Virus record (IMG/VR): IMGVR_UViG_3300028275_000006
Span: 148,543-212,542 of that record
DNA: 64,000 bases
Strand: one strand, 5' to 3'
The notes beneath the pieces were generated by a model that had not been told where the DNA came from, did no database searches, and saw only the letters and a program-made list of their open reading frames with translations. Every line of letters begins with the position of its first letter. Position 1 is the first letter of the stretch. Both the position numbers and the translations under genes were made by a program. This document shows positions 3,890 through 51,317 of the stretch, one piece after another.

Positions 3890-5941
3890 TTATTTTTCAT
3901 GTGCTATGAATTCACCATTCCAATTATCTGGAAGGTTCTGTTCTTTCATAAACTCGCAACGTTCAATCCAGATTTTGTAGTACTTGTCCATTTGTCCACC
4001 AAAGTTGCCTTTTAGTTTTTTACACATAGCGGCTGCTTCGTCGAACTTCTTTTGTTTATACAAGGCATGCATCAACTCGTGCTGTACTTTATCTTTACTG
4101 TAATCTTCACCTTTGGTTCTTAATGCTGTATAGATTAAGTCTGCTACAGTTTTGCCTTTAGGTTGTAAGTTATCTAGCATTAGATAGAAGAAGTCATCTT
4201 TAGTACGGTTGTAAGTTTCAGCACCGATGATACATAACACGCCATAGGCCTTACAACGTGCTTCTAAACGAGCGGCGGTTGAAACCATGTCACCTAAGAT
4301 GTCGTAACTATGTCTGTCAGTTGATCCCATCTCACCAATAAAGCCAATACCTGAGTTACAACCCCAACCCATTGCGGCTGGTGGTAAGCCTTGTGCTTCC
4401 ATTAGTTTAGTATACTCATCAACAGCATCTAACATCTGTAAACCAACAGCAACAATAGTACGGGCATGATTAGGATCTTCAATCGGAGCACCGTGTATGT
4501 GCATACTTGCGTCACCTACATACTTTATGACCATACCCTTGTTGTCCATGATAGGCTGACTAATAGCATCCATGTAACCGTTCATATACTTGCCTAATCC
4601 AGCAACATCATCACCGTAGTGTTCTCCAATGGGTGTAAAGCCACGCAAGTCACTGAACATAACGGATACGTCTTTACGCACACCACGCTTGATTAGGTCT
4701 GGATCTTTTTGTAGCATTTCTACTACTTCCTTACTACAGTATCCAGCGAACTGTTTCTTAATTGCCTGTTTCTGTAAAAACTCGCTTATAAACTTAACGC
4801 CATAACAATGAAGAGCAACGATAATAAGGCCAAACGCGATCGCAGTCGCGTCTCCCAAGACGAGCCAATTATTGAAAGCGTAGATAGTACCAGGAACGAT
4901 GGCACCAACAATAACCACAGTAGCACCAATGCCAACATAAGTCCACCTCGATAAGAAAATTAATAATATGCCAAGTGATACTAATGCTAAAATTTCAACC
5001 CCGTCGGCATAGTCGGGACGTTGAATAACAATGCCGTTAACCATTGTACCAATTACTGCGGCCTGCACTTCGTGAGGAAATACAGCACCTTTGCTTGTCG
5101 GTAACGGATTACTAATACCAGCGGCAGTAGGACCTACAATAACGACGGCGCCACCTAAATCTTTTGGAAGTTTAACAGCACTAACGCTATGAGCTTCTTG
5201 GCTCCAATCGATCCAAATTCTTCCTAAACTATCTGTAGCAATAGGACCAAACTTTGGAATACGCATTTTCTCAACGCCGCCTTCAAAAAGTTTTACTTGG
5301 AAGGTAGAGTCTCCTGCGGCGACTCTAAGTGTCTCTAAACTCAATGCTGGATATAATTTGCCGTCTACAGTAACAATTAACGGCATGCGGCGATTAACAC
5401 CATCTACTTCTGGAAGTGTTCCTGTAATGCCAACACCTGCGGCATTTTGTTCTAGTTGAGGAACGTTGGCGATTAGTCCCGGGTATTGAATAATTTGATC
5501 TAGATGTTCTGGACCTAGTACAGCCGATCCTGGAACACGTGGTGTATTCTTTGTTTTCTGTGCTGGCGCACTTCCTAGTACTACAGGGAACTCTTTTAGA
5601 GTTTGTCCTAGCGCACCATCTCCACCAGTACGATCTGTCTCTGGCATAAGAACATTAAGTACAACAAGTCCTGCATTTCTTTGGTATAGTTCCTTCACAA
5701 GTTTAGCATATTCTGCTCTTGGTAAGGGCCACTGACCATATTTGTCTAACGTGGCTTCGTCGATATTTACAGTAACTATGTTGTTAACTGTAACTTCTTT
5801 ACTTGTAATTAATGTGTCAAAATAACGTAGTCTTACGCTTTCAACAAATGTAGGATCTGCAACTCTGACACCAACAACTAGTGCTAGAGTTAGTAAAGCA
5901 GTCCATGGACTTACTAGTATTTTTTTGAATTGTATTTTCAT
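3890..5941 (-). CDS. CHASE2-domain class III adenylate cyclase
   Basis: N-terminal TM, periplasmic CHASE2 (GQWPLPR, DGVNRRMPL), 3 TM, then FSDLRGFT, IKYVGD, YDILGD, AARLE. Confidence 0.92.
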   Translation of the reverse strand: MKIQFKKILVSPWTALLTLALVVGVRVADPTFVESVRLRYFDTLITSKEVTVNNIVTVNIDEATLDKYGQWPLPRAEYAKLVKELYQRNAGLVVLNVLMPETDRTGGDGALGQTLKEFPVVLGSAPAQKTKNTPRVPGSAVLGPEHLDQIIQYPGLIANVPQLEQNAAGVGITGTLPEVDGVNRRMPLIVTVDGKLYPALSLETLRVAAGDSTFQVKLFEGGVEKMRIPKFGPIATDSLGRIWIDWSQEAHSVSAVKLPKDLGGAVVIVGPTAAGISNPLPTSKGAVFPHEVQAAVIGTMVNGIVIQRPDYADGVEILALVSLGILLIFLSRWTYVGIGATVVIVGAIVPGTIYAFNNWLVLGDATAIAFGLIIVALHCYGVKFISEFLQKQAIKKQFAGYCSKEVVEMLQKDPDLIKRGVRKDVSVMFSDLRGFTPIGEHYGDDVAGLGKYMNGYMDAISQPIMDNKGMVIKYVGDASMHIHGAPIEDPNHARTIVAVGLQMLDAVDEYTKLMEAQGLPPAAMGWGCNSGIGFIGEMGSTDRHSYDILGDMVSTAARLEARCKAYGVLCIIGAETYNRTKDDFFYLMLDNLQPKGKTVADLIYTALRTKGEDYSKDKVQHELMHALYKQKKFDEAAAMCKKLKGNFGGQMDKYYKIWIERCEFMKEQNLPDNWNGEFIAHEK

Positions 5942-6474
5942 TTTTTAAATCCTGGCTTTGGTAAGTGGTTGCGGCCGTAACTAATTCTACTGCCTATAAT
6001 TTGTTCTAATGCTGTATGTAAGGCTTGTCCTGATAAATGTTTACGCAACCATTTTTCTGCTAAGTTGTTAATAATCTTTTCATTAGCGTGTGCAAAGCCG
6101 CCTTTACTTTTAGCGTGTACATAAGCGTGATATGCTTCGTGGGCCGCAACAGCAACGTCTCGTGCCGCGGTGCTGTCTAGATTTGGTAAGTTGATACTGC
6201 CAACGCCGTCGCCTGTATCCCTAAACATTGGATCTCCGCTACTCTGGTAGACATAATACATTCCAGGACCTAATTCGTCATCATCGTCAGTTACTCTATC
6301 TCTACCTAGAATATTTCTAACTACATCATATGCTGTCCAAAGCGTGGCTGCAGGTTCTCTGCTTAATTTTGTAGTTGGAAGCATTATTTTATCTTCAGGA
6401 TCGAAGTCACCATATCTTGCTTTTAAATCGGCGTCACTTGCTTCTGCTTCTTTTATAAATTCTTTTGCTCTCAT
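5938..6474 (-). CDS. MRAKEF-family protein with HExxH zinc-metalloprotease-like motif; true start 6474
   Basis: ATG at 6474 gives MRAKEFIKEA; HEAYH with downstream NEKIIN. Confidence 0.7.
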   Translation of the reverse strand: MRAKEFIKEAEASDADLKARYGDFDPEDKIMLPTTKLSREPAATLWTAYDVVRNILGRDRVTDDDDELGPGMYYVYQSSGDPMFRDTGDGVGSINLPNLDSTAARDVAVAAHEAYHAYVHAKSKGGFAHANEKIINNLAEKWLRKHLSGQALHTALEQIIGSRISYGRNHLPKPGFKK

Positions 6475-13861: not shown

Positions 13862-15415
13862 TTAACGGATTGCGAAACCCATTTTACCAACTGGTCTTCT
13901 TGTAGCGTAGAAGTTACTGCTGGCATCCAATTTAATTGTGCCCGTGAATACTGGAGGATAGATAACTTCAAAATTGGAGAAGTATGCTCCATTTGATGGT
14001 TTACCTTCAGCGTCCTTAGTAGGCTTCTGTTGTAATGAAGTTTTGACTTGTAACATATTGGAACGTTCCAGAACTGCTTTGAAGAAAGCATCTGTCTTGT
14101 AGTCCTTGTTTACTTTATTTGCTGTGCCAGTTGCTACTGCGGCTAATAAATGCCAACCAATTCTGTAGTCTGGTCTTGTCGAATCGTCTGTGCCTTTATA
14201 AACTAACAATCCTTTTAAGTCGCCTAGTGTTTCGTCATCAACATGCGGCTGATCGCTGTCAATGATTTCCATAATTTTTTCTGCTTGTGTACCATCGATG
14301 ATGCCTACTTTGACACCTAATTCTAATGCACCAGCAATAGAACCATTTCGTTTCCATTGTGCGCTTTTAGCCACATAACTCATGTCAGGGTCTTTAATAA
14401 TGTTTACAATGTCTAGTAGCTCTTGGAAGCCTGGGTTGACTTTAGGATCAAACAATCCTTCATAACGTTGCGGGTATGCCGCTATATCGTCTACCACACC
14501 AGATACAGATGCCTTTGCGCCGCCTTGCTTGTCTTTGGAACTTACACGAATCTTCACATCACCTGAAAACTTCAAATAACTATCGTATAGTTTTTCAGCA
14601 GGATCGTTTGGAAATTCTACACCAACGGCTTCTTCAAACTTCAAACCCATTCCGGCTTCGGCCTGTTGCCATGCACCACTTAAGAACTTTTTCTTAATTA
14701 ATGAAATTGGTGCGGCTGTTTCACCTAAATCAATTTCGTAACTCTTAGCATAGTCGCCGGCGCCGGGGACAGGATTACTGCTACCAGAAGCAACAGCCTG
14801 CAATAGTTGTACTACCTGTTGTTTAATAGCATCTGCTAGATCATCACGCTCTTGAATAGAACCTTGCACTTGTGTAGGAATATCATCTACAGCAATGGTT
14901 GTATTAGTAGGAATAATTCCAACAGGTTTTAAATTAGTTAGAGCACGTTGTTGTACTCCAGAAATTTTATCTTCCTCTCCTGCTTTGCCGCTTAGTTGTA
15001 CATAACCAGTTAGGTCTGAAAACTGTTTAGTCTGTAAGAAGATTGGATAAGCACCTGGCTTCTTAGCAGGCTTAAGAGCGATCCATGCTATGTTCTTTTT
15101 AGATTTTTCATCTTTAAAAATCATTACTAATGCGGCACCTGCTTTTTCAGGTATGCTTAGTCCGCCCACTGGCGGAAGTGTTAGTGCGTTAGATACTGCT
15201 ACATTGTTAGCCTTCACATAGTCCATAATCTCTGGAACTAGTTCTTGATAATTGTCTCGCTTGTCTACGTCTTGTGGAAACACTTGAGATGCAATCATAT
15301 GAATAACATTTCCATCTGCATTTTTAAATGCTACACGTTTGCCACGGCCGGCTTCTTCTGCACGGCGGGCCATGCCGCCTTCAGATTCAAATAAAATAAA
15401 TTCTTTTGCTCTCAT
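13862..15415 (-). CDS. MRAKEF-family 517-aa protein, possible PD-(D/E)xK nuclease-like core
   Basis: N-terminus MRAKEFILFES; LYDSY...IRVSSK resembles a D...(E/S)xK motif (weak). Confidence 0.55.
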   Translation of the reverse strand: MRAKEFILFESEGGMARRAEEAGRGKRVAFKNADGNVIHMIASQVFPQDVDKRDNYQELVPEIMDYVKANNVAVSNALTLPPVGGLSIPEKAGAALVMIFKDEKSKKNIAWIALKPAKKPGAYPIFLQTKQFSDLTGYVQLSGKAGEEDKISGVQQRALTNLKPVGIIPTNTTIAVDDIPTQVQGSIQERDDLADAIKQQVVQLLQAVASGSSNPVPGAGDYAKSYEIDLGETAAPISLIKKKFLSGAWQQAEAGMGLKFEEAVGVEFPNDPAEKLYDSYLKFSGDVKIRVSSKDKQGGAKASVSGVVDDIAAYPQRYEGLFDPKVNPGFQELLDIVNIIKDPDMSYVAKSAQWKRNGSIAGALELGVKVGIIDGTQAEKIMEIIDSDQPHVDDETLGDLKGLLVYKGTDDSTRPDYRIGWHLLAAVATGTANKVNKDYKTDAFFKAVLERSNMLQVKTSLQQKPTKDAEGKPSNGAYFSNFEVIYPPVFTGTIKLDASSNFYATRRPVGKMGFAIR

Positions 15416-16320
15416 TCACAGTTCCAACGTTTACGTGCTTTGCAGATTGCCTTGTCTGGTGTCTTAGTGCAATCAATATTGTGCATTTTCTTTTGGCCAT
15501 CACTTCTAGCACAAAAACTTGATCTACGCTTACTTGCCTTAGATCCTTTCTTTAATTTGCTAGGAGGTGTAGTGACTGCTGTTTTTAATTTACTACCAGG
15601 ATGTTCTCTACGATATGCTTTAACGGCTTTACTGCTCATGCCATCGGTTTTGTCTTTCTTATTAACCTTCTGCCAATCTTCTGACATACCTTCTGGGCCA
15701 ATTTGAACTAACCATTCTAATTCATCGTCTGCATCTCTAACACTGAAGAATTTAACATTAGGAATCTTCTTAGCCGCAAACCATTTGTTAGCCACTTTAA
15801 CCATTAGGGCACGATGTTGACGATCATTAACATCCGGTTCATATCCGCCTGTTAAGTTTGCCCACAATGCACTTGGATTGCCATGGCGATCGTAACCCAA
15901 CAATTCACGCCATTGTTGTTGTAAGCGATCTGGCACATACTGATCCAATTCAGTGTCGCTCATCCACTCTCGGCCAATATCGACACCTTCCGCCATGGCG
16001 GCTTCAGTTAAGTCTTCTGGGGCAAAACCAATATAACTCTTACCATGCTCATCGCCAGACTGCACAACAAATGCGCCGCCTTCTTCTGATTCGATTTCGC
16101 CAATTTCCCAACCCATACGATTTAATAGTTTTTCAACTTTTTGTTGTATGTCGTCATCGCCATTGTACCAAATACGAGCGTACTTGAGTAATGTTTCTTC
16201 TTCGTCGCCACTATTATCCGGCGCAAATTCTTTTACATTTTGCTTTTTCTTTTTAGCAATAGCGATAGCGGCTTGTTGTGCGGCATTGGTTGCTTCTGTG
16301 ATGAATTCTTTTGCTCTCAT
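15412..16320 (-). CDS. MRAKEF-family modular protein with basic Cys-containing C-terminal domain seen in T4-like phages
   Basis: MRAKEFITEA; C-terminal GSKLKTAVT...RRSSFCAR...CKARKRWNC. Confidence 0.7.
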   Translation of the reverse strand: MRAKEFITEATNAAQQAAIAIAKKKKQNVKEFAPDNSGDEEETLLKYARIWYNGDDDIQQKVEKLLNRMGWEIGEIESEEGGAFVVQSGDEHGKSYIGFAPEDLTEAAMAEGVDIGREWMSDTELDQYVPDRLQQQWRELLGYDRHGNPSALWANLTGGYEPDVNDRQHRALMVKVANKWFAAKKIPNVKFFSVRDADDELEWLVQIGPEGMSEDWQKVNKKDKTDGMSSKAVKAYRREHPGSKLKTAVTTPPSKLKKGSKASKRRSSFCARSDGQKKMHNIDCTKTPDKAICKARKRWNCE

Positions 16321-39053: not shown

Positions 39054-39296
39054 TCAACCCATCTTTAATAAGATTGCTACTACTAACGAAATAACGCCTG
39101 CAATGATAGTGCCGGCTGTGCCAATAATAACTTTGGTTAAACTCTTTTGACCTTCGATGATATCGTTATGCACTGACTCTACTTTTTCTTCAAGTGCAGT
39201 TAAACGACCTTCAAGTTGTCCATAGCGTAAAGCACAAAGGTCAACGTGTGCTTCTAAACTAGTTTTTTCTAATTCTGTTGTAGGCGCTGTAGCCAT
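39054..39296 (-). CDS. small coiled-coil plus C-terminal TM protein (XhlA/holin-like)
   Basis: Heptads then IIGTAGTIIAGVISLVVAILL. Confidence 0.55.
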   Translation of the reverse strand: MATAPTTELEKTSLEAHVDLCALRYGQLEGRLTALEEKVESVHNDIIEGQKSLTKVIIGTAGTIIAGVISLVVAILLKMG

Positions 39297-39347
39297 GTTT
39301 TATCTCCAAAATAAAAATACATGCCTAGTTGTGTGCCTTTGTTATAT

Positions 39348-39677
39348 TTATTTATCGGTATTGACCGATTTGCGACCTTTGACAAAGTCTTTGATGTCTC
39401 GAAGTTCCACCAAGACTTCACCAACATTGTCTCTAGTTTTATCCCACTGGTGTACTAGTTTGTTGATAACATATATTGCCCACCACCACCATATCACTGC
39501 TATGGCAAACATACTAGTCTCACCAAATACCATAGCCCTGGCAAAGAGAGTGTTGTCGCCAAATACCCATATAAAGAAAATGCCTGCAAGAGATACCAAG
39601 GGTAGTACTGCCGCTAACCATGCCCATATTTTAATTTGTTTAAGTGTTTTTATTCTGAAGTTGTTGAAGTCGTTCAT
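39348..39677 (-). CDS. two-TM membrane protein
   Basis: Two hydrophobic segments, charged C-terminus. Confidence 0.65.
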   Translation of the reverse strand: MNDFNNFRIKTLKQIKIWAWLAAVLPLVSLAGIFFIWVFGDNTLFARAMVFGETSMFAIAVIWWWWAIYVINKLVHQWDKTRDNVGEVLVELRDIKDFVKGRKSVNTDK

Positions 39678-40744: not shown

Positions 40745-41317
40745 ATGTCTTACACTATCTATAAACTGCCGACTCACGAGTTCTATAGATATAGAACTCA
40801 CTTGTTAAGTCTCGACGACGAAACTAGATATCTACGATTTGGATTTCATATTCCAAATATAACAATTAATGAATTAGTTAATCGTTGGGAATTAAATTCG
40901 GATAAGCATAAAATATTTGCTATTGAAAACGATAACTTAGAAGTTGTTGCTGTAGCACATATCAGTCTAGAAGACGATCCAGCAGAACTAGCCTTTAGTG
41001 TTTTTAAAGAATGTCAAGGTCAAGGTATGGGCGATGCTCTAATGGCTCGTGCTATTGAATACTGTCAAAATCGTAATATCAAACACGGCTGTATGGTCTG
41101 TTTAGGTATCAATGACAAAATTAAAAGCCTGGCTAGAAAACACAATGTTCTTGTTAAAACAGAATACAGTGACAGCCACGGTGAAATAGAAATTCCAAAC
41201 CCTACTCCAGTTAGTCTATGGAAAGAGTACATGGAAGACAATTTTGCTAAGATAGACCATCTAGGCAAAACACAAAGGAAATTTGCTCAAATATTCAGAT
41301 TTCCGTTGCTTTTTTAA
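40745..41317 (+). CDS. GNAT-family acetyltransferase
   Basis: AELAFSV...QGQGMGDALM acetyl-CoA motif A. Confidence 0.88.
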   Translation: MSYTIYKLPTHEFYRYRTHLLSLDDETRYLRFGFHIPNITINELVNRWELNSDKHKIFAIENDNLEVVAVAHISLEDDPAELAFSVFKECQGQGMGDALMARAIEYCQNRNIKHGCMVCLGINDKIKSLARKHNVLVKTEYSDSHGEIEIPNPTPVSLWKEYMEDNFAKIDHLGKTQRKFAQIFRFPLLF

Positions 41318-41626: not shown

Positions 41627-41893
41627 ATGAGTGATTTAACACCAAAACTACCAGAAGTAAAATTCAACAAAAACGGTTATGAAATTCGTACTGACATACT
41701 AGCAATGGCTAAAGACTTAGTTAGCCAAGACTTCCATGTGAAGTTTCAAGGTTGGGAAATGACTGCTACTCGTGATGAGAAGACAGGTCAGATTGTTAGC
41801 AAAGTAGATATGCCAGAGTTTCCAGGACTTGAGAAAGTTTTAGAAGCCGCTGAAAAGATGTACGCTTTTGTTAATACTGGCGCAAAGAAATAA
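41627..41893 (+). CDS. conserved hypothetical protein
   Basis: KNGYEIRTDILAMAKD...AEKMYAFV; strong SD. Confidence 0.7.
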   Translation: MSDLTPKLPEVKFNKNGYEIRTDILAMAKDLVSQDFHVKFQGWEMTATRDEKTGQIVSKVDMPEFPGLEKVLEAAEKMYAFVNTGAKK

Positions 41894-41932
41894 TAATTAT
41901 TATATTAATCCCATAGGGAAATTATAGAAAAT

Positions 41933-41960
41933 AAAAAAGGACTCTTCGGAGTCCTTTTTT
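41933..41960. terminator. bidirectional intrinsic terminator
   Basis: AAAAAAGGACTC-TTCG-GAGTCCTTTTTT between convergent genes. Confidence 0.9.
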
Positions 41961-43371
41961 ATACTTGAGCGGCAAATATTGTGCCGCCTATCTTTTCGCC
42001 GCCAGCGGCTATCATCTTATCTCTAAATCCAATGTTAGTGCCTGCACCGTAGGCCGCACTAGAAGCCGCTGTAAAGTATTTGAGATTTGTTGGAACTTGC
42101 GGAAGAATATTAATTGCGCCATCTACAATGTTAGCCAATTGTCTATCAGTTGGGCCACGTGTAAAGTTAGCACTTGGGCCCGGATCAAATCTTGTACCAG
42201 TAACTGCTTGGAACTGATTTGGAGCTCTTAACACACTGATAACATTGTCGCCCCAATTACCTGTGCGTGTTCTGTTTAGGATAACGCCCATAACATAGGC
42301 TTGTTCTTTACTGTTATTGCTTGCTTCAGCAGTTGTAGCACGTAACAAGTAATTCCATTCTTTGTCGTCCATTGGACGTCCTAGATACTTTTCTGCTGTT
42401 GCTCTTGCCTTTTGCGTACTCTCGGTGCTAGTTAAGGCTGCAACTTCTTCAGCACCTCTGCTATAGTCTAATGACTTAACATCCTTGTTAGTACTCTTTG
42501 TTAAAGTAGCCAATACTTCAGGCTTGGCTTTGAGCATGGCGTTCATTTTATCCGCAGTTTGCTGATTAACAATTCCTGTTGCTTCTAAGCCATTCTTCTC
42601 TTGGAAGGTTTTGATAGCACCTGTTGTTTCTTTACCTTGAATCCCATCAACACCATATTTAGGTAAAGGTACGCCCAATGCTTCTAATGCCTTTTGTGCA
42701 TCTGCAATTAATGGGCCACGTTTGCCGTCTGGAACTTCTACACTAAATGGAACTGCCGTAGCATCTTTTTCTTTATTGTCTGCTGTATCTTTACTAGCAG
42801 GTGCGGCAATAGAAGAACCTGCTTGAAATAGTTTACTGTATCCGTTAAACGGGTGTATGCCATCGCCCTTGGCTATGTTTGGATCAAAGGTGTTTAGTGA
42901 ACCTAAAAACTTTGCTCCTGCGCCTGCGGCAATGCCGGATAGTTTTTGATTTGCGCCTGTGTAATCTACAGTCCATTGTTTACCATTAGTAAACTTTGTA
43001 GGCTTTTGCAAAGGTGTTTTGCCATCAGCAACACCAACTAGTGCTACCGATGCTCCTGCATCTTTTAACGCTTTAATCTGTTGACTAATTGGACCAAAGT
43101 TTTCCGATTGAATCTGTGTTCCGTCTTCTGTTTCTACTTTACCACTGTTAGCGGCTCCACTACTTAAAATAACAATAGCACCTTTTGCTTTGCCACTTTT
43201 AACAAAGGGCGTTACAAGATTTTGTAGAACAAATGTAGTGTTTTTTCCAGGATTAGTGTATTCTTTGCTAACGCCACCGGCGCCAGCAATGCCATTGGCA
43301 ATACTGTCTCCAATTACGTAAACGTTGGATTTTGATTCAAAAAGTTTGGATAAGAATTCTTTGGCTCTCAT
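41959..43371 (-). CDS. MRAKEF-family fusion: SGNH hydrolase, PG-binding domain, SleB-like cell wall hydrolase
   Basis: VIGDS...DGIHP; VDGIQGKETTGAIKTFQ..NGLEATG; TTAEA...VILNR...NQFQAV. Confidence 0.82.
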   Translation of the reverse strand: MRAKEFLSKLFESKSNVYVIGDSIANGIAGAGGVSKEYTNPGKNTTFVLQNLVTPFVKSGKAKGAIVILSSGAANSGKVETEDGTQIQSENFGPISQQIKALKDAGASVALVGVADGKTPLQKPTKFTNGKQWTVDYTGANQKLSGIAAGAGAKFLGSLNTFDPNIAKGDGIHPFNGYSKLFQAGSSIAAPASKDTADNKEKDATAVPFSVEVPDGKRGPLIADAQKALEALGVPLPKYGVDGIQGKETTGAIKTFQEKNGLEATGIVNQQTADKMNAMLKAKPEVLATLTKSTNKDVKSLDYSRGAEEVAALTSTESTQKARATAEKYLGRPMDDKEWNYLLRATTAEASNNSKEQAYVMGVILNRTRTGNWGDNVISVLRAPNQFQAVTGTRFDPGPSANFTRGPTDRQLANIVDGAINILPQVPTNLKYFTAASSAAYGAGTNIGFRDKMIAAGGEKIGGTIFAAQV

Positions 43372-43462
43372 AGTCTTATTTATGTAAACTTCTCTGTTGG
43401 GTTAGGCGTTATTATATTATAGCACTTAAAAAGGTGGATTACTATGTTGATGAGGACCAATT

Positions 43463-43828
43463 ATGAAACGCTTAGTAGTATTCATTGCGTTGACAACAAG
43501 TTTGACATTAAGCCTGGCAAATACGAGCTTGAAAAACCCGACCCATTCAGTCTCCGTTGCCCAACACCCGACTGTGATACGAAGCGCACAGGTCCGTGTA
43601 AATCTACCGAAAATCCAAAAACCTAAGATATTTGTTGGACATCCACATAAAATCTTTGTCTCTGATTGGGACGGAGATTTCCTAGAAATTGATGATGTTA
43701 TCACCAGTTATCGTCGTAGGGATTTAAACAAGATTGAACACGAAGACGGTATCAGTGATAATGTTCGTTGGCGATTGTTTTTAGCTCGCCAACTAGCATT
43801 ACTCAAATATAGACAAATTTACAGTTAA
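43463..43828 (+). CDS. hypothetical secreted protein
   Basis: N-terminal signal-like segment; SD GAGG. Confidence 0.55.
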   Translation: MKRLVVFIALTTSLTLSLANTSLKNPTHSVSVAQHPTVIRSAQVRVNLPKIQKPKIFVGHPHKIFVSDWDGDFLEIDDVITSYRRRDLNKIEHEDGISDNVRWRLFLARQLALLKYRQIYS

Positions 43829-44634
43829 TCTGCTTTGCCGCACTTAGCACGTTTAGCATTAGTTAACGCACCGTAGTCCACAGGCCATTCTTGTCCAGGT
43901 TGTAGTTCTTTTGCGTTAGCAGGATACTTGAATGTAACGCCTGCTTGTTGTTGTATTTGTGCTACTGGTACACGGAACTTGGTCAAGTCGTTGCCAAGAT
44001 TAACATATGGTTTAGTGTGTGGGAAAGCCCAACCAGCAATAGCACCTGTTTGTTGATCAATAACAATCTTGTAGTAGCCATGTGGAACAATAACGCCATT
44101 GCCAATTACACCGTCACCAGCGCCATAAAATGCTCCAACGTATATTGTAAACGGACGATTCTGCTGTACCGCCCACCCACGTACTGAAGTTTCCAGTAGT
44201 TTCCAAATTCCACGATTTAAACTGCCGTGTTGTGGATACATATTGGTCATTAGGAAACTCTCATACTCCACGATCTGTGACCAACTTAGGTCACCATCGG
44301 GAGCGGCATGTCCTTTGTCGTAGCCTGTGCCTGCGTAGTCATTAGGAGTAGCACCCCCAGGAACTGACTGATCCGCAACGAATGCGTTCGTACGTGGAAA
44401 GCATCCTAAAGCATTTTGTGGAAGTAATGTGTATGCTACATAAGCAGGAATCTTAACAGGAGCATCGTATGCTACTAGATATGCTTCGCGGCAAATTGGA
44501 GCAACTTGTCGTTGTGTTTGAGCAAAGCCGTAAGGACTGTGTACTTGACAGGCTTGTACTGGTAGTGGAGCACGTTGTTCCCAGGCAAACACTTGGGTTG
44601 AAACAAACGCTAACAATAATAATAACTTCTTCAT
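43825..44634 (-). CDS. secreted DNA/RNA non-specific endonuclease (NucA/EndA-like)
   Basis: Signal peptide; YDKGHAAP, TNMYPQ, LNRGIWKLLE, VPHGYYKIV. Confidence 0.9.
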   Translation of the reverse strand: MKKLLLLLAFVSTQVFAWEQRAPLPVQACQVHSPYGFAQTQRQVAPICREAYLVAYDAPVKIPAYVAYTLLPQNALGCFPRTNAFVADQSVPGGATPNDYAGTGYDKGHAAPDGDLSWSQIVEYESFLMTNMYPQHGSLNRGIWKLLETSVRGWAVQQNRPFTIYVGAFYGAGDGVIGNGVIVPHGYYKIVIDQQTGAIAGWAFPHTKPYVNLGNDLTKFRVPVAQIQQQAGVTFKYPANAKELQPGQEWPVDYGALTNAKRAKCGKAD

Positions 44635-44667: not shown

Positions 44668-47600
44668 TTATCGAGCGATCTCTGTAATACGAAGTGTTAG
44701 TGCTGTTGATGAATTTGTAACGGTTATGCTATCGTCCGCTGAGTCTCTACGAACACCAACGGTAATAGTCTTTGCTGTGGTACTTGAATTTGTATATCTA
44801 CCCGTTAGCGGAAATAAATTACCTGTTCTACCGCTTTCATTACTTCTTGTCATTTGACGAGCGTAGACTATTTCAGAACCATCTACTTTGATACGAGAAA
44901 AATAACTGTCTGTACCAGCACCACCACTATCTGATGCCGCTCTATAGTCTGCCACGTGAACGTGTATGATCAAGTAACTTGAATTGCTGGTCGGTGTATA
45001 ACTGTAGGTAAGAAGATCTGTGTCGCTGGTGCTAGTAGCCACTGTAGTATTATTAACAGTAAACTCGCTGTTGTTCAACATAGTATCTTTGATGACTTGT
45101 CCAGCTCTCCAAGCACCTGCTTGTATAAATCCAGTAGTGGCCAAGTTACCTGTAGTATCTACAGCCATCTTTACTGCGCCGCCACTTTCATTTAGGTTGT
45201 TAGTCACACGGAACAGTTGTCCGCTTAGGACAGTGAATGACCCGTTGTAACTATCAACAGCCCAGTTATTATTGTTGGCATAATACATCAACACACCCGG
45301 AGTGTCTGTAGTGCCGTTGTCTAGGGCAATATCACCAGTGCCCAGTGTTTTGGTGTATGTACCAGTGCCCGCTTTAACAGCACTGGCAATGTTTGTAGTG
45401 CCACTGCTGTTGCCAATGTTTAGAGTAGTTGCGGCACCTGCAAAGTTAACGGTAGTTGCTGTTGTGTTAAAGATATTAGCACTAGTGTTTCCGGTTAATA
45501 AATTCTGTGCTGTAACATCGCCGGTACTGGTAGAGAACCCGCCGGCATAGATAGTGCCAACTGAGTTGATACCGCCACCAAGATATATGTTACCAGCAAC
45601 ACCTACACCACCAGATACTTTCAATGCTCCAGTTGTTGTGTTTGCGCTGTTAGTAGTATCTGTAATGCTAACTGCACCACTAGATGTTAAACCAGTTAAT
45701 GTTCCTACACTAGTCAAACTACTGTTTACCACAGTAGATTTTAATGTTACGCCAGTTAGAGTATCTGCGGCTGCTGTAACGGTAATGTTTGCGCTACCAT
45801 TAAAACTTACACCGTTAATATTACGAGCAGTTTGTAGAGTAGTTGCTGTAGTAGCATTACCAGTATAGGCTGTTGTTTGTACAGTACTATCTGGGAATGT
45901 TATCTGTCCAGCCTTGTCAAATACCCAAGTCTTGATAGACCTTACACTTGCTGTTCCTGATGACACATAAAGAGTAACACCTGAAGTATCAGTTGTTACA
46001 TAACTGTCAAAAGGAAGTCCTGCTCCAATAGTAGTGGCTTTCCAATACAAATTAGAACTAGATGTATCACCACTGCTCTTTACGCCAATACTGTTAGTGC
46101 CGCTGTCAAGAGTATTACTAGGCAGAGTTGTGGTTCCATCGTTGTTAAACTTCCATTCATAGTATGGTGCTGGGCCGCCTGTTTGGATTGTTAAACCAGT
46201 TGCTTGTCTAAATGTATTTGTGTTAGATAAGATTAAACTGCCGGCGCCATCAAAGCCTAACGAACTAGTAAAGCCACTGGCTTTGATACTGTTGACTTCA
46301 ATAGTAGCACTAGAGCCTAGACTAATACTTGTACCGTTAACTGTGACTGCGCTGTTGGCTAGTTTGCTGTTGGCTATTGATCCAGCCAACATAGTATTAG
46401 TTACTGTACCTGTGTCACCAGTTGTTATCACTGTACCAGTTGTTGCTGGCATTGTGATAGTAGTTGTACCAGCAGCCGCACTTGCTTTCAATACAGTAGT
46501 GCCACTTGTTGATCCGTTGAATGTAGCACCAGTACCACCTATGGTTGGTAATGTCAGCGTTTTGTTAGTCAGTGTCTCACTGCCCGCCAGTGTAGCAAAA
46601 TCTCCATCAGTCAGTGCTGAGTTAAACTGAGCAGTGGTTCCGCTGACTGTATTAGAACCTAGAGCAATAGTTTTGTTGGTTAGTGTTTGGCTACCAGTTA
46701 GGGTTGCTACTGTTGAATCAATAGCGATAGTAACTGCTGAACTACCGTTATAAGTTGTGCCGCTTAATCCTGTGCCAATAGTTAAGGCATTTAAGTTACT
46801 GCCCAGACTTACACCAGATATAGTGCTGTTGGCTAGTTTAGCATTGGCGATTGATCCTGCTAACATTGTATTTGTAACAGTACCAGTATCACCTGTAGTA
46901 ACTACTGTGCCTGTAGTTGCTGGTAAAGTAATAGTTGTAGTACCTGCGGCTGCTGATGCTTTTACTACTGTAGTACCACTTGAGCTGCCGTTGAACGTAG
47001 CGCCAGTACCACCTATCGTTGGTAGTGTTAATGTCTTGTTGGTTAATGTTTCAGCACCAGTTAGAGTAGCATAGCCACTGTCGTTAGTCAGTTGGCTAAC
47101 GTTAGTTGGAACTGTAGGAGCACCAGTTAACTTACTGTAGGCAAGACTTGTTATCCAGGCAGGGTTAGCATACGATCCTGTTGAGTATAATCCGTTGGTA
47201 ACTGTTGCCGCATTACCATCAATGCTTACACCAGTTAGTGTTTGGCTAGCACTTAGTCTTGTAAAGTCTAAACTGGTTGTGCCAATATAAGCACTAGAGT
47301 AGATAGTTGGCTTGTTTGTTAAGTCTGTGTAACTGCCACTAAACAATGTAGGTGTACCAGTTAGTTTGCTGTAGGCTAGGCTTGTTATCCACGCAGGGTT
47401 ACTGTATGTTCCTGTAGTGTAGACTCCATCAGTTACTGTACCGGCATTGCCATCAATGCTTACACCTGTTAAAGTTTGGCTAGCACTTGTTCTGTTTAGT
47501 GCTATGCTGGTTGTACCAATGTAGTGCGTGTCTGCTCGTAGGGCTACGGTTGAGTCTACAGCGATAGTAACTGCGGTACTACCATCAAAACTTGTACCAC

Positions 47601-50600
47601 TCAATCCACTGCCAATAGTTAGTGCGTTAGTTGTACTGGCTGTAACAGTAATGCCAGCAGAGCCGTCAAAGCTCACATTGTTAATTGTTCTTGCTGTGCC
47701 TAGTTTAGTTGCTGTTGCGGCATTGCCTGTAATGCTACCTACAATGCTGTTAGTTGCTGTTAGACTTGTGATAGTCACAGCACCGTTCATAGTTGTTGTA
47801 GTTGTAGCACTACCTAAGTTAAGTGTAGCAGTACCACTTGTAACACCCGTACCAATGTTAATAGTACTTGTACCGCCTGCTAAGTTTGTGCCAATGTTTA
47901 AATTCTTAACATAGGTAGCACCCGTTGCCGCGGTAAGAATGTTTAGTGTGTGATTAAAAACACTACTACTAGGACCCAATGTTAAAGAAGGTGTTGAGGC
48001 ATAAGCATTGGTACTGGTTGTGCTGTCAAGGTTAGTAATGTAAGCAGTACTAATACTTGGACTTGAGTTAGTAACTAATGATGTACCTGTTCCAACCAAT
48101 CCACTCACTAACTGTGTATAAGACAAGTTAGCAGTTGCGTTAGATGCTGTGCTGACTACGGTGAATGTAGTTTGTCTTGCTGTCGCTATAGTATTAGAAA
48201 CTATTTGTGTGCCGGTACTCAACTGATAAGTTATAGTTGCTGCCGAAGTAAAGAATGTAATCTGTTGCCCAGCAGTTAGCGTAGTCAAGTCTGGCAGTTT
48301 GAATATGTGTGTACCGCTTATTGATCCTGTAACATTGTAATATCTAGTTATAGTTGCGGCATCTAATGTTGTAGTAGCACCTGCTGTTGCCACAACGGTA
48401 GTAGTACTTGTATCCAAACTAACTGTGACTGCGGCACTACCATTGAAGGTGCTGGCTGTGCCTGTTAAGCCTCTACCGATAGTTAGTGCGTTGGCTGTGT
48501 TGACTGTGCCACTGCTACCTAAACTTATACTTGTTCCATTAACTGTGATTGTGCTGTTGGCTAACTTGTTATTGGCAATACTGCCGGCCAACATAGTATT
48601 AGTAACAGTACCAGTGTCTGTGGTTAGAACAGCATTAGTAACCTTACTACCTGCTAAACTGGTAATCCAACTTGGATTAGCGTAACTTCCTGTAGTGTAA
48701 ACACCATTAGTCACGGTGGCAGCATTGCCAGCAATACTGTCTGGAACTACGATACTAGATGTTTGTTCAACTGTTAGAATAACTGCCGGGGCTCGTGGCA
48801 CTGAAGGACTTGTTTGTGCGGCAATGGTCTTAAGGTAAACATCAGTGCTAGGACTCTGCCAATATATCTGTATCTGTTCTCCTGCTTCAACAGTTAGAAT
48901 GAACGGATTGATAGCAACCAACTTGCCCAATGATCCTGTATCAGCATCGATAGTATAAACCACTGTACTGTCATCTACGTTTGAAGTAACACCATTGACT
49001 GTAGTCTTTAACCAAACACTGACATCCTGTTCTGCGGCATTGTCATTGACAAACTGTAAACTGAATACGATAGAATATGTGCCAGCATAACTGAACGTGA
49101 TCTTAGATCCGTTCTGTATTGTAATACCGTTGGCTTCATAAGTTCCGCCAATTAATACTAGGTTAGCACTGGTAGCACCTGCGTTAGACTGTTGTGCTGT
49201 GACATCATAGAAACTACCGTAGTAGCCTAGAGCACCTGTAGCACCTCCACCCGATCCGCCTGGTATCCAACTATGTGTAACAGAGTCATAGGTTAATACT
49301 TGTCCTGTGATAGCACCTGTGACGTTAACATCTGTCAGTGCTGACAAGGATGTAGTCAGTGTTGGTTGATTAGTTACGTTGGCCCAATCAACAGAGCCAG
49401 TCCAAGCAGTTGTCTGTGTAGTTTCGTCAGCAAAGTTTATGCTTGGAACAGAGATACCAGACTCTACTGACAGTACACCAGTAGCATAGTCTAAGACAAA
49501 TGCGTTGTCGTGCCAAGCACCATCGTTGCGAGTAATATAGAAACTGTGATCGTTTCTGCGACCCATTGCCAGTTTAGGATCTCCGTTCCATTCAAATGTA
49601 AATGTATTAAATCCTGGACTAGCCGAAACTTGATTAAAGTTAATATCTGGTTCGCTACCAATAACACGAAGAATACCAACACCATCCTGTAAGACACTGG
49701 CTGTCAATGTCATAGCCGGTTGGTTAGTGTTATTACTTTCAAAAGCAAATGTACCGTTGAAGGTTGGATTGTTAATTGTTGGACTGGTAAATGTTTTATT
49801 GGTTAGTGTTTCTTCGCCAGTTAAAGTAGCATAGCCAGATAATGCGGCACTGGTAATAAATCCTGCGTTGTTAGTTAAGTCGCCGGTATCTAATGGAATA
49901 GTTGGAGCATCGGTTAAATCATTCCAACTGTATGTTCCTAACCACGCTGTTGTCTGTGTAGTGTTGTCGTTGAATGTTAACTGTTTGCTCAGTTTAACTT
50001 CTGTACTACTAAATCGAATGACTTCTCTATCGCCTGTGGCTACATTGCCTGCTACAATCTTTGTGTAGGTATTAGCAATACTTGTACCTAATACTAGATT
50101 ACCTCCGCCAGCATTGCCACCTTGAACATACAACCAACCATCACGTTGTCCCACGTTGTCATATAGGCTATTCTCTGCTGTACCATCCCAGCTCGCACCG
50201 TTGATACCCATGTCAATGTAGTAGTCTGTGTCACTGCCATTAGGACTTGTTGCTACCCATTCTGTACTTGAGTGAGCACCGTCGCTGGTATTTTGGAAGT
50301 TATTCTGTGCGTAGTCGTTGACCTGTGCTTGACTTTGGATAACTGTATTTGGTAGTGCTGCCACACCTGCCGCACGTCCTGCGAATACTGCTGTGAATCC
50401 ATCAGCATCGCCAGGGAGGATACCTGTAGTGTGTAACTTGCCATTAGCATCAAGATTGATAGTGTTTAGATCAAAATTACTTTGAACTAGAAAGTTGCTG
50501 TCGTTTGACAGTTGGCTAACTGCTGTAGGTATGCTTGCTGATGTAATATAGCCGCGACTGGTTACATAACTTTGTGTAGCATAACTTGATAATGAACTGG

Positions 50601-51102: not shown

Positions 51103-51309
51103 TCAGTGTTCGCTACGTGTAAGTTTTTGAATAACAGGACTGTCTTTGCCCTGTTCTGCTTTGTCCAGCTCTAAATGCTGTTGTAATGGCGGAACCATTA
51201 CAGGATCTGGGTCTTTTTCTTCGGCATCGTGGCTTTGTTTATCACTAGAGTTATCGTCTAGTGCATCAATTATATCTGCTAGTGATCTTAGGAATTCTGC
51301 GGCTCTCAT
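51103..51309 (-). CDS. small acidic protein starting MRAAEFL; likely start 51309
   Basis: TAAATA 5 nt upstream of ATG 51309. Confidence 0.65.
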   Translation of the reverse strand: MRAAEFLRSLADIIDALDDNSSDKQSHDAEEKDPDPVMVPPLQQHLELDKAEQGKDSPVIQKLTRSEH

Positions 51310-51317
51310 ACAATTAT

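What the first reader, a model, noticed from the sequence alone, without database searches (positions are those of the whole stretch)
41959..43371. SGNH esterase / PG-binding / SleB fusion: lytic enzyme that may remove its own inhibitor
Seen: GDS and DGIH catalytic blocks, a PG_binding_1-like domain and a Hydrolase_2 domain with its Glu (TTAEA) in one MRAKEF-tagged protein. Known: peptidoglycan O-acetylation blocks lytic transglycosylases and is removed by SGNH esterases (Ape1). Inferred: a virion-delivered enzyme that de-O-acetylates then cleaves host peptidoglycan during entry.
Basis: inference. Interest (0 to 1): 0.65.

Follow-up and report, generated by a model that had tools for sequence, protein, structure and literature searches.

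The report
Propeptide-tagged esterase–transglycosylase phage lysin
A river-water giant phage related to T4 encodes a cell-wall-cutting enzyme that joins an esterase, a wall-binding module and a glycan-cutting module behind a short T4-style "pack me into the capsid" tag. It may strip a protective chemical group from the host wall before cutting it, possibly during infection, but no part of this has been tested at the bench.

Summary
Window 41959–43371 (−) is an intact 470-aa late gene with four parts:
- **Leader:** residues 1–12/16, MRAKEF…L-F-E↓S.
- **SGNH esterase:** a compact domain with S23, G42, N75, D170 and H173, invariant or near-invariant in about 100 homologs. AF2 pLDDT is 92.5, and SGNH folds match at Z 12–14.
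- **PG_binding_1:** E 1e-13.
- **SleB-type lytic transglycosylase:** Z 10.8 to SleB, with E349 invariant.

The host genome is a riverine, T4-related jumbo myovirus, nearest to Atu_ph07/Rak2-type phages.

New evidence:
- The leader resembles the T4 capsid-targeting sequence (MKTYQEFIAE). 99 of 102 distinct leaders carry (I/L)-x-E↓(A/S/G), the gp21 cleavage motif, against 8% of control windows.
- Five unrelated ORFs in the window share the leader.
- A 278-kb relative encodes gp21 protease and gp23 capsid homologs.
- In other phages the same esterase carries a Sec signal peptide instead of the leader, so it acts outside the cytoplasm.
- Within the family, SGNH–PGB is fused only to glycan-strand cleavers (SleB-, λR-, SLT-, PF18013- and GH19-type). 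A distant cyanophage relative pairs it with an M15 peptidase.

De-O-acetylation and virion delivery remain inferences. An ordinary late endolysin role is not excluded, because no other muralytic gene was found. Verdict: a new variant of known kinds, of moderate to high interest.

The parts
41959..43371 (-). Whole gene: 470-aa leader–SGNH–PG_binding_1–SleB-like lysin (stop codon at 41959–41961)
   Evidence: There are 212 homologs, most with the same architecture.
43377..43382 (-). TAAATA late-promoter-like motif, 5 nt upstream of the ATG with no Shine-Dalgarno sequence between
   Evidence: It is the most enriched upstream hexamer on the contig (40 of 242 genes against 2.1 expected). It precedes the wedge, fiber, tailspike and virion-protein genes.
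43336..43371 (-). N-terminal leader, residues 1–12 (MRAKEF…L10-F11-E12, then S13). Putative T4-type capsid-targeting propeptide with an L-x-E cleavage site. The predicted helix runs to residue 16.
   Evidence: AF2 predicts helix 3–16 at pLDDT 62–77. The T4 CTS and gp21 motif come from PMC8442874 and PMC9026906.
42802..43323 (-). SGNH/GDSL esterase domain, residues 17–190. Block I is G21-D22-S23 (S23 codon 43303–43305). Block II is G42. Block III is G72-A73-A74-N75. Block V is D170-G-I-H173 (42853–42864).
   Evidence: AF2 pLDDT is 92.5. Foldseek and VIA match SGNH folds at Z 12–14.
42544..42720 (-). PG_binding_1 domain, residues 218–276
   Evidence: Pfam E 9.7e-14. The six-frame family search also finds it.
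41962..42414 (-). SleB/Hydrolase_2-type lytic-transglycosylase domain, residues about 320–470. The catalytic-candidate E349 codon is at 42325–42327.
   Evidence: Pfam. Alignment A2 has E349 invariant. The profile hits SleB. AF2 pLDDT is 87. VIA gives Z 10.8 and 10.6 to SleB 4fet and 4f55, with the next hit at Z 5.4.
15412..16320 (-). Second leader-bearing ORF (302 aa, MRAKEFITE↓A) with a basic DUF6321 C-terminal domain
   Evidence: TAAATA lies 20 nt upstream.
13862..15415 (-). Third leader-bearing ORF (517 aa, MRAKEFILFE↓S). Function unknown. An orthologue with the same leader is present in G001.
5938..6474 (-). Fourth leader-bearing ORF (178 aa, MRAKEFIKE↓A)
51103..51309 (-). Fifth leader-like ORF (68 aa, MRAAEF…). 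It has no (I/L)-x-E motif. TAAATA lies 5 nt upstream.

Best explanation
The gene encodes a late-expressed, modular murein-degrading enzyme of a T4-related jumbo myovirus from river water.

**Shown by sequence, profile or fold:**
- a 12–16-residue N-terminal leader;
- a compact SGNH serine esterase with an intact Ser-His-Asp triad and oxyanion residues;
- a PG_binding_1 module;
- a SleB-type lytic transglycosylase with its conserved Glu.

**Inferred mechanism:**
1. PG_binding_1 docks the enzyme on murein.
2. The esterase removes an O-linked acyl group, most probably the 6-O-acetyl of MurNAc.
3. That frees the C6 hydroxyl which a lytic transglycosylase must use to form 1,6-anhydro-MurNAc.
4. The C-terminal domain then cuts the glycan strand.

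**Inferred delivery:**
1. The leader is a T4-type capsid-targeting propeptide.
2. It brings the protein into the prohead core.
3. A gp21-type protease cuts it off after L-F-E12.
4. The mature enzyme travels in the head with other leader-tagged proteins.
5. It is released at infection to open the wall locally.

In this phage the gp5-like tail hub has no detectable lysozyme domain.
For: **Architecture:**

**Extracytoplasmic, murein-directed esterase:**
- The esterase is fused to PG_binding_1 in all full-length homologs.
- 25 distinct stand-alone homologs carry a Sec signal peptide exactly where the leader sits.
- Sub-threshold DUF459 (PatB family) hits occur in 7 of 55 N-domains and in the second SGNH domain of tandem forms (PMC9487903).
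- C. jejuni PatB ranks 2 and 4 in Foldseek, and OatA-C scores Z 13.1.

**Coupling to glycan cleavage:**
- The C-terminal partners are SleB-type (86 of 121), λ-lysozyme-type (25; PDB 1am7, E 2e-6), PF18013 (5), GH19 (1) and SLT (1). None is an amidase or peptidase.
- Lytic transglycosylases are blocked by 6-O-acetylation, and bacteria use an SGNH esterase (Ape) to unblock them (PMC6174289).

**Leader as propeptide:**
- Five otherwise unrelated ORFs share it, and their upstream DNA is not conserved.
- It is kept on leader–SGNH, leader–PGB–LT and tandem-SGNH variants.
- 99 of 102 leaders have (I/L)-x-E at positions 9–12 followed by A/S/G, against 8.3% of control windows.
- This matches the gp21 motif L/I-X-E and the 10–19-residue T4 CTS MKTYQEFIAE (PMC9026906, PMC8442874).

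**Lineage and timing:**
- The lineage is T4-related, with a gp6-like wedge, a gp5-like hub, rIIA and a family-B polymerase.
- Relative G001 has Peptidase_S77 (E 6e-27) next to gp23 (E 6e-99) and its own leader-tagged lysin.
- A late-promoter-like motif is shared with structural genes.
- No lysozyme domain is detectable in the hub protein.

**Precedents:**
- S-H38 gp166 carries the same SGNH subtype in a baseplate-module wall hydrolase.
- φ11 Tal Gp44 is a virion-associated hydrolase with an SGNH domain (PMC4876445).
Against: - No biochemical or proteomic data exist, because the phage is uncultured.
- The fold search ties thioesterases, aryl esterases, carbohydrate acetylesterases and OatA/PatB within about 2 Z units, so the substrate is not resolved.
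- The domain lacks the Ape1 insertion domain, and Ape1 is not among the top matches.
- S-H38 pairs the esterase with an M15 peptidase, which does not need de-O-acetylation.
- The own contig (about 55% complete) has no gp21 or gp23 hit.
- The host is unknown, and so is whether its murein is O-acetylated.
- The lysin is the only recognisable muralytic enzyme in the available parts of G000 and G001. This is what one would expect of the endolysin.
- Sec-exported paralogs in other phages argue for action from inside the infected cell, at least there.
- About 160 residues of the hub protein are unassigned and could hide a divergent lysozyme.
Confidence: 0.5

Rival explanations
1. The protein is simply the phage's endolysin. 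It is made late, stays in the cytoplasm and reaches the wall through a holin at the end of infection. The esterase still helps the transglycosylase, but from within the cell. The leader has another role, such as regulating activity, membrane association or folding, or it is removed without any packaging.
For: - It is the only protein with a recognised muralytic domain in 55% of G000 and 75% of G001.
- PG_binding_1 plus a transglycosylase is the usual layout of modular endolysins of Gram-negative jumbo phages (own knowledge).
- A late-promoter-like motif precedes it.
- Two small membrane proteins that could act as holins lie 2–4 kb away at 39054–39677.
- Sec-exported stand-alone paralogs in other phages must act from within the infected cell.
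- JGI and PHROGs label its relatives as endolysins or PG hydrolases.
Against: - The leader is shared with four unrelated ORFs of the window and is conserved family-wide.
- It carries a motif matching gp21 cleavage specificity in 99 of 102 cases. An endolysin has no known need for this.
- There is no adjacent holin or spanin in any of seven loci examined.
- No T4 holin family hit was found, although that search rang nowhere, including the controls.
- Both genomes are incomplete, so another endolysin may lie on the missing part.
Confidence: 0.3
2. The SGNH domain does not de-O-acetylate murein. It is instead a lipase, lysophospholipase or other envelope esterase that attacks membrane lipids, LPS acyl or acetyl groups, or another wall polymer. 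The fusion then combines membrane or surface attack with murein cleavage.
For: - The top VIA match is TesA/lysophospholipase L1 (Z 13.8), with aryl esterases and carbohydrate acetylesterases tied.
- JGI names some homologs 'lysophospholipase L1-like esterase'.
- Many phage SGNH domains sit in tail fibers or spikes that deacetylate surface polysaccharides.
- The S-H38 partner is a peptidase, which is not sensitive to O-acetylation.
Against: - Within this clade the domain is always next to PG_binding_1 and a glycan-strand cleaver, never in a fiber or spike.
- DUF459/PatB and OatA-C are among the nearest sub-families.
- The domain is minimal at about 170 residues, with no lid or extra binding module.
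Confidence: 0.17
3. The SGNH domain works as a PatB/OatA-like O-acetyltransferase that modifies host murein, for example to exclude other phages, rather than as an esterase.
For: - PatB and OatA-C are structural neighbours.
- There are weak DUF459 hits.
- A GNAT acetyltransferase gene lies nearby on the other strand at 40745–41317.
Against: - No PatA/MBOAT or AT3 donor partner was seen.
- Acetylating the substrate would block the fused transglycosylase.
- Sub-family hits are below Pfam cut-offs.
Confidence: 0.03

Closest known systems
O-acetylpeptidoglycan esterase Ape1 with lytic transglycosylases of Gram-negative bacteria (Neisseria, Campylobacter)
   Same: An SGNH serine esterase acts on murein so that lytic transglycosylases, which need the free MurNAc C6-OH, can cut (PMC6174289). 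Both have a Ser-His-Asp triad and the block I/II/III/V motifs.
   Different: - Here the two activities are fused in one phage protein with a PG_binding_1 module.
- The esterase is a minimal domain of about 170 residues without Ape1's inserted carbohydrate-binding domain.
- There is no OAP (patA/patB) gene context.
- The activity is untested.
SleB, the germination-specific lytic transglycosylase of Bacillus (PDB 4fet, 4f55; Pfam Hydrolase_2)
   Same: The C-terminal domain shares the fold (Z 10.8, 121 of 122 residues aligned, rmsd 2.9 Å) and the conserved Glu. SleB also pairs its catalytic domain with a PG_binding_1 domain (own knowledge).
   Different: - Sequence identity is about 20%, and the Pfam score is only just above the cut-off.
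- It is a phage protein, not a spore protein.
- SleB recognises muramic-δ-lactam cortex, and nothing suggests that here.
T4 internal proteins IPI–III and Alt with their capsid-targeting sequence (CTS)
   Same: Both are short N-terminal peptides shared by otherwise unrelated proteins of one phage. Both have an -E-F-I-x-E- core and end in the gp21 motif L/I-X-E followed by a small residue (PMC9026906, PMC8442874). The lineage has gp21 and gp23 homologs.
   Different: - The leader is one residue shorter and starts MR(A/F)xEF or MK/RI(L)(D/E)II.
- The cargo is a large wall-degrading enzyme rather than a small basic anti-restriction protein or an ADP-ribosyltransferase.
- Packaging and cleavage have not been shown.
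Capsid-internal or virion-associated murein hydrolases: T7 gp16 (own knowledge) and φ11 Tal Gp44 with an SGNH domain (PMC4876445)
   Same: These are phage particle proteins that carry murein-cleaving domains to open the wall at entry. φ11 Gp44 also combines a wall hydrolase with an SGNH domain.
   Different: - They come from different phage types and have different domain orders.
- T7 gp16 has no esterase.
- The SGNH activity of φ11 Gp44 is uncharacterised, and it is a tail protein rather than a head protein.
Synechococcus phage S-H38 gp166 (a cultured T4-like cyanomyovirus)
   Same: It has the same SGNH subtype, with GDSIA, LSSG..N and GD.IH motifs (31% identity, pairwise E 2e-8). The domain sits inside a wall-hydrolase protein encoded in the baseplate module.
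   Different: - It is 1,196 aa long.
- The partner is a Peptidase_M15_4 domain, not a transglycosylase.
- It has no PG_binding_1 hit.
- The SGNH domain is internal, and there is no leader.
Modular endolysins of Gram-negative jumbo phages (such as φKZ gp144: PG_binding_1 plus a transglycosylase), and the 'Lipase_GDSL_2' endolysins listed from uncultured phages
   Same: They share the PG_binding_1 plus glycan-cleaving layout. A 2018 survey already listed Lipase_GDSL_2 among the domains of putative endolysins of uncultured phages (PMC5968864).
   Different: - That survey gave 'no obvious role' for the domain.
- It did not describe the leader, the module swapping or the Sec-exported paralogs.
- φKZ-type endolysins have no esterase and no leader.

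Membership tests
SGNH/GDSL hydrolase superfamily | Three-layer α/β/α fold with a parallel β-sheet | tested here: met
   AF2 pLDDT is 92.5. VIA gives Z 12–14 over 143–165 aligned residues to many SGNH structures. Foldseek probability is 1.00.
SGNH/GDSL hydrolase superfamily | Block I GDS with the nucleophile Ser, block II Gly, block III GxN(D) Asn, and block V DxxH | tested here: met
   - G21-D22-S23 is conserved in 101 of 101 homologs, and G42 in 96 of 101.
- G72 is conserved in 100 of 101.
- N75 is present in 74; the other 27 have the canonical GAND shifted by one residue.
- D170 is conserved in 100 of 101 and H173 in 101 of 101.
- The profile alignment to PDB GDSL proteins places all blocks in register.
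SGNH/GDSL hydrolase superfamily | Pfam family hit on the protein itself | tested here: not met
   There is no Pfam hit on residues 1–205. Membership rests on 25 of 55 homologs hitting PF13472, on the family profile and on the fold.
O-acetylpeptidoglycan esterase (Ape1) family | SGNH domain with an inserted carbohydrate-binding β-sandwich. The protein is periplasmic and encoded with patA/patB. | tested here: not met
   The domain is compact at about 170 residues with no insertion. Ape1 structures are not among the top 50 matches. The context is a phage genome without patA or patB.
O-acetylpeptidoglycan esterase (Ape1) family | Hydrolysis of 6-O-acetyl groups of MurNAc in murein | not testable with these tools
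   This needs an enzyme assay on O-acetylated sacculi.
PG_binding_1 (PF01471) | Pfam score above the gathering cut-off | tested here: met
   The score is 51.7 bits against a cut-off of 23, E 9.7e-14, over residues 218–276.
SleB / Hydrolase_2 lytic transglycosylases (PF07486) | Pfam score above the gathering cut-off | tested here: met
   The score is 29.0 bits against a cut-off of 27, so it is marginal. The family profile hits SleB 4fet and 4f55 at E 1.5e-3.
SleB / Hydrolase_2 lytic transglycosylases (PF07486) | SleB catalytic-domain fold with a conserved catalytic Glu | tested here: met
   VIA wide search gives Z 10.8 and 10.6, with 121 of 122 residues aligned. The next fold, MltG, scores Z 5.4. 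E349 is invariant in 34 of 34 sequences and aligns to the SleB Glu.
SleB / Hydrolase_2 lytic transglycosylases (PF07486) | Formation of 1,6-anhydro-MurNAc products | not testable with these tools
   This needs muropeptide analysis.
T4-type capsid-targeting propeptide (CTS) | A short (10–19 aa) N-terminal peptide shared by otherwise unrelated proteins of the phage | tested here: met
   Five ORFs carry it. Their upstream DNA is unrelated. The leader is kept on differently composed homologs.
T4-type capsid-targeting propeptide (CTS) | Ends in the gp21 cleavage motif L/I-X-E | tested here: met
   99 of 102 leaders carry the motif. P3 is I (60) or L (37), the Glu is at position 9–12, and P1′ is A/S/G in 81 of 99. 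Control windows carry it at 8.3%.
T4-type capsid-targeting propeptide (CTS) | The phage encodes a gp21-type prohead protease and a T4-type capsid | tested here: inconclusive
   Neither is found on the own contig, which is about 55% complete. Both are present in relative G001, which has its own leader-tagged lysin.
T4-type capsid-targeting propeptide (CTS) | Actual packaging into proheads and proteolytic removal | not testable with these tools
   This needs virion proteomics or a reporter-packaging test.
Canonical endolysin of a lysis cassette | Adjacent holin and/or spanin genes | tested here: inconclusive
   There is no adjacent small membrane protein in seven loci. Candidate membrane proteins lie 2–4 kb away. 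The PF11031 search rang nowhere, including the controls.

The most novel reading that the evidence does not exclude
T4-related jumbo phages of fresh water use a CTS-like propeptide to load a set of envelope-active cargo proteins into the capsid. One cargo is a two-step 'deprotect then cut' murein enzyme, an O-acetyl esterase joined to a lytic transglycosylase. It would be matured by the prohead protease and ejected at infection. It would take over the wall-opening job of the lysozyme domain that the tail hub of these phages appears to lack. The same esterase module has been re-routed in sister phages by swapping the propeptide for a Sec signal peptide.
Probability: 0.35. Interest if true: 0.78.

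Novelty: new variant of a known kind. Interest (0 to 1): 0.6.

Why it matters
**Murein O-acetylation as a barrier to phages.** O-acetylation is known as a bacterial way to control autolysins and resist lysozymes. It has hardly been considered as a barrier to phage lysins. This family suggests that phages answer it with a built-in esterase. The family has at least 212 members in public metagenomes, and none in 50,697 deposited phage records. Because the glycan-cleaving partner is swapped freely while the esterase and binding half stays constant, the family offers a natural experiment for testing the coupling.

**Capsid targeting beyond the T-even phages.** If the leader is a working capsid-targeting sequence, it extends a mechanism known from T4 to uncultured jumbo phages and to a much larger enzymatic cargo. 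It also gives a simple sequence rule for predicting their ejected proteins: MR(A/F)xEF…(I/L)xE↓A/S.

**Practical use.** An esterase–transglycosylase fusion is a candidate lysin against bacteria whose O-acetylated walls resist ordinary lysozymes.

Tried and rejected
**Searches that led nowhere**
- Pfam and single-sequence PDB searches on the N-domain gave nothing. Single-sequence PDB search on the C-domain gave nothing. Profiles and folds were needed.
- The own contig has no gp21 (PF03420) or gp23 (PF07068) hit.
- Megablast and tblastn of the whole protein, and of each catalytic domain, against 50,697 phage records found no true homolog. They found only PG_binding_1 hits and a weak S-H38 hit.
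- The 517-aa leader protein has no match in phage records or PHROGs.
- Cultured cyanophage homologs of the DUF6321 leader protein do not carry the leader, so they give no support for the tag.
- A literature search for the leader strings found nothing relevant. No paper links an O-acetyl-PG esterase, lytic transglycosylases and phages.
- The genome-collection scans with P0136 and alignment A4 found no relative in 185,579 species genomes.
- The T4 holin family search rang nowhere, including the controls, so it is uninformative.
- No consistent holin or spanin neighbour was found.
- RNA-library contigs cover the gene and break near its ends in three of four runs. Contigs cannot prove transcription, strand or ends.

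- Complex prediction, because no binding claim is made.

- Read laying was given 5,901 letters.

**Considered and rejected**
- The leader as a Sec, Tat or SAR signal: it has no hydrophobic core and no twin arginine.
- The leader as a shared translation-initiation region: upstream DNA is unrelated, and conservation is at the peptide level with synonymous changes.
Full report
**1. Observation**

Window 41959–43371 (minus strand) holds an intact 470-aa ORF that starts MRAKEF.
- Pfam finds PG_binding_1 at residues 218–276 (E 9.7e-14).
- Pfam finds Hydrolase_2 at 354–437 (29 bits against a cut-off of 27).
- Pfam finds nothing on residues 1–200.

A word-index search returned 212 relatives, all from metagenomes and most with the same length and layout.

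**2. The three domains**

*N-terminal domain.*
- 25 of 55 family members hit Lipase_GDSL_2 on their own.
- A profile of the family hits GDSL-like structures in PDB at E 1.7e-8 over the whole domain, with all blocks in register.
- The AlphaFold model is confident (pLDDT 92.5).
- It matches SGNH hydrolases at Z 12–14 with 143–165 aligned residues.
- Foldseek ranks C. jejuni PatB second and fourth, and lists OatA-C and N. gonorrhoeae PatB.
- These matches are tied with thioesterases, aryl esterases and carbohydrate or sialate acetylesterases, so the fold does not name the substrate.

*C-terminal domain.*
- The model has pLDDT 87.
- It matches the SleB catalytic domain at Z 10.8 and 10.6, with 121 of 122 residues aligned. 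The next fold, MltG, scores Z 5.4.
- E349 is invariant in 34 diverse sequences and aligns with the Glu of the SleB 'YGES' segment.

It is not an Ape1 orthologue, because it has no inserted binding domain and no OAP gene context.

**3. Whose gene it is**

- The window is the last 64 kb of a 212.5-kb IMG/VR contig, estimated about 55% complete.
- The contig carries a gp6-like baseplate wedge, a gp5-like hub, rIIA, a family-B DNA polymerase, a ligase, a Lon-like protease, DnaK, RNR and giant fiber genes.
- The wedge protein is 35–38% identical to those of Sinorhizobium phage Phosso, Agrobacterium phage Atu_ph07, Salicola phage SCTP-2 and the Rak2-like phages of enterobacteria, which have genomes of 340–490 kb.
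- The DNA recurs in 14 riverine metagenome runs and in 6 metatranscriptome runs.
- In three of the four RNA runs laid, contigs break close to the gene's ends. That hints at real transcripts, but contigs cannot prove it.
- TAAATA is the most enriched upstream hexamer on the contig (40 of 242 genes against 2.1 expected). It precedes the wedge, fiber, tailspike and virion-protein genes, and it lies 5 nt before this gene's ATG. I read it as a T4-late-type promoter and the gene as a late gene.

**4. The leader**

- Five ORFs, all in the window, begin MRA(K/A)EF.
- Their upstream DNA is unrelated, and the shared codons show synonymous differences.
- Across the lysin family the leader is conserved as MR(A/F)xEF… or M(K/R)(I/V)(L/I)(D/E)II….
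- It is kept on leader–SGNH, leader–SGNH–PGB, leader–PGB–LT and tandem-SGNH variants.
- Of 102 distinct leaders, 99 contain (I/L)-x-E. P3 is I in 60 and L in 37. The Glu sits at position 9–12. The next residue is A, S or G in 81. Same-length control windows from the same proteins carry the motif in 8.3% of cases.
- T4 gp21 cuts after Glu at L/I-X-E, first seen at a Glu-Ala bond. The T4 internal proteins carry 10–19-residue capsid-targeting propeptides, and the first ten residues (MKTYQEFIAE) suffice for packaging (PMC9026906, PMC8442874). MRAKEFI(T/K)E↓A is that pattern, one residue shorter.
- The own contig has no gp21 or gp23 hit.
- A 278-kb relative with its own leader-tagged lysin encodes Peptidase_S77 (E 6e-27) beside gp23 (E 6e-99).

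I conclude that the leader is most probably a gp21-processed targeting propeptide. Packaging itself has not been shown.

**5. Where and on what the esterase acts**

- A search with the N-domain alone found stand-alone proteins of about 190 aa. Some keep the leader. Twenty-five distinct ones carry a classical Sec signal peptide at exactly the leader's position.
- Their contexts are phage-like, and cluster members lie on contigs of up to 337 kb.
- The module therefore works outside the cytoplasm.
- Behind SGNH–PGB, the family carries five module types:
  - SleB-type (86 of 121);
  - a module matching phage λ lysozyme (25 members; PDB 1am7, E 2e-6), which is itself a transglycosylase by my own knowledge;
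  - PF18013 (5);
  - GH19 (1);
  - SLT (1).
- None of the partners is an amidase or peptidase.
- Lytic transglycosylases cannot act on 6-O-acetylated MurNAc, and bacteria use an SGNH esterase to unblock them (PMC6174289).
- Weak, sub-threshold DUF459 (PatB family) hits in the family point the same way (PMC9487903).
- One caution applies. The nearest cultured-phage relative of this SGNH subtype, S-H38 gp166, pairs it with an M15 peptidase in a baseplate-module protein. That supports a virion-associated, wall-directed role, but not a strict coupling to glycan cleavage.

**6. Entry or exit?**

*For entry:*
- the leader logic above;
- the other leader-like proteins with PG-binding and transmembrane segments;
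- a tail hub with no detectable lysozyme domain;
- precedents of particle-borne murein hydrolases (PMC4876445, and T7 gp16 from my own knowledge).

*For exit:*
- no other muralytic domain was found in the available 55% and 75% of two genomes;
- the gene is expressed late;
- the Sec-exported paralogs must act from within the cell.

No holin or spanin sits next to the gene in seven loci. I put the packaged-enzyme reading at about one half and the plain endolysin reading at about 0.3.

**7. Novelty**

- No homolog exists in 50,697 deposited phage records.
- None was found in 185,579 species genomes by pattern-seeded scans.
- A 2018 survey listed Lipase_GDSL_2 among the domains of uncultured-phage endolysins but gave it 'no obvious role' (PMC5968864).
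- The leader strings appear in no paper searched.

Each part belongs to a known kind. The combination appears to be undescribed: a CTS-like propeptide on an esterase–transglycosylase fusion, free swapping of the cutting module, and propeptide-for-signal-peptide exchange. I rate it a new variant of known kinds with interest 0.6.

Noticed in passing
window 5938-6474(-), 13862-15415(-), 15412-16320(-), 51103-51309(-): Four more ORFs start MRA(K/A)EF. Three carry (I/L)-x-E↓A/S at residues 7–10. The 68-aa one has Asp-rich repeats instead and no such Glu. They are candidate co-packaged proteins of unknown function.
   Followed up: partly
G000:C1:55366-57144(-) and 58456-59331(-); G000:C1:63465-64436(-) and 64438-65586(-) (outside the window): There are two further pairs of shared N-termini: MD(I/M)(R/K)xILxxLD and MRLR(N/E)LF. 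The 592-aa MDIR… protein has a PG_binding_1 domain, coiled-coil or low-complexity regions and a C-terminal TM segment but no catalytic domain. Its 802-aa orthologue in G001 keeps the same leader. This looks like an envelope-spanning ejection protein.
   Followed up: partly
whole contig; e.g. window 43377-43382(-), 51315-51320(-): TAAATA is enriched 19-fold upstream of genes, usually about 20–25 nt before the ATG with an SD sequence between. In about 9 genes, including the lysin, it lies only 4–7 nt from the ATG with no SD. That suggests leaderless late mRNAs.
   Followed up: partly
window 43825-44634(-): A DNA/RNA non-specific endonuclease (Endonuclease_NS, E 8e-38) with a signal peptide lies directly upstream of the lysin. 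The same family occurs near a Sec-exported SGNH homolog on another phage contig.
   Followed up: no
window 39054-39296(-) and 39348-39677(-): These are an 80-aa coiled-coil protein with a C-terminal TM anchor (conserved in G001) and a 109-aa protein with two TM helices. They are possible holin- or spanin-like proteins, 2–4 kb from the lysin.
   Followed up: partly
window 40745-41317(+): A GNAT acetyltransferase gene lies on the opposite strand, two genes from the esterase. No link between them was established.
   Followed up: no
window 15412-16320(-), C-terminal 90 residues: This is a very basic, Cys-containing DUF6321 domain. It is 50–70% identical to proteins of T4-like cyanomyoviruses and is also found in Pelagibacter and Microcystis phages. 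In the cyanophages the gene lies next to terminase or tail-fiber genes and has no MRAKEF leader.
   Followed up: yes
G000:C1:4560-5951(+) (outside the window): The gp5/VgrG-like baseplate hub protein (464 aa) has OB-fold and β-helix matches only. No lysozyme domain was found by Pfam, six-frame PF00959 or PDB sequence search. About 160 residues remain unassigned.
   Followed up: partly
G000:C1:9907-23988(+) and 85207-94515(-) (outside the window); window 44668-51063(-): There are giant ORFs of 4,694, about 3,100 and 2,131 aa. The last is a repeat-rich fiber. The N-domain of the lysin weakly matches an internal stretch of phrog_19273, a 4,846-position profile of giant phage proteins.
   Followed up: no
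window 41801-41936: RNA-library contigs of two runs join 41801 to 41936, skipping 134 nt just downstream of the lysin stop. Several contigs diverge at 41957. This is probably strain variation in the intergenic region.
   Followed up: no
window 18445-20310(-): The phage encodes a DnaK (621 aa) about 68% identical to proteobacterial DnaK sequences deposited in phage or contaminant records. The contig also has a Lon-like ATP-dependent protease and RNR.
   Followed up: no
L053 (Synechococcus phage S-H38, NC_070964.1 38631-42221): gp166 (1,196 aa) is annotated as hypothetical. It combines an SGNH domain of this subtype (aa 579–699) with Peptidase_M15_4 (aa 997–1047), and its gene lies within the baseplate gene block. 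It is an unannotated candidate virion-associated wall hydrolase in a cultured phage, where the esterase could be tested.
   Followed up: partly
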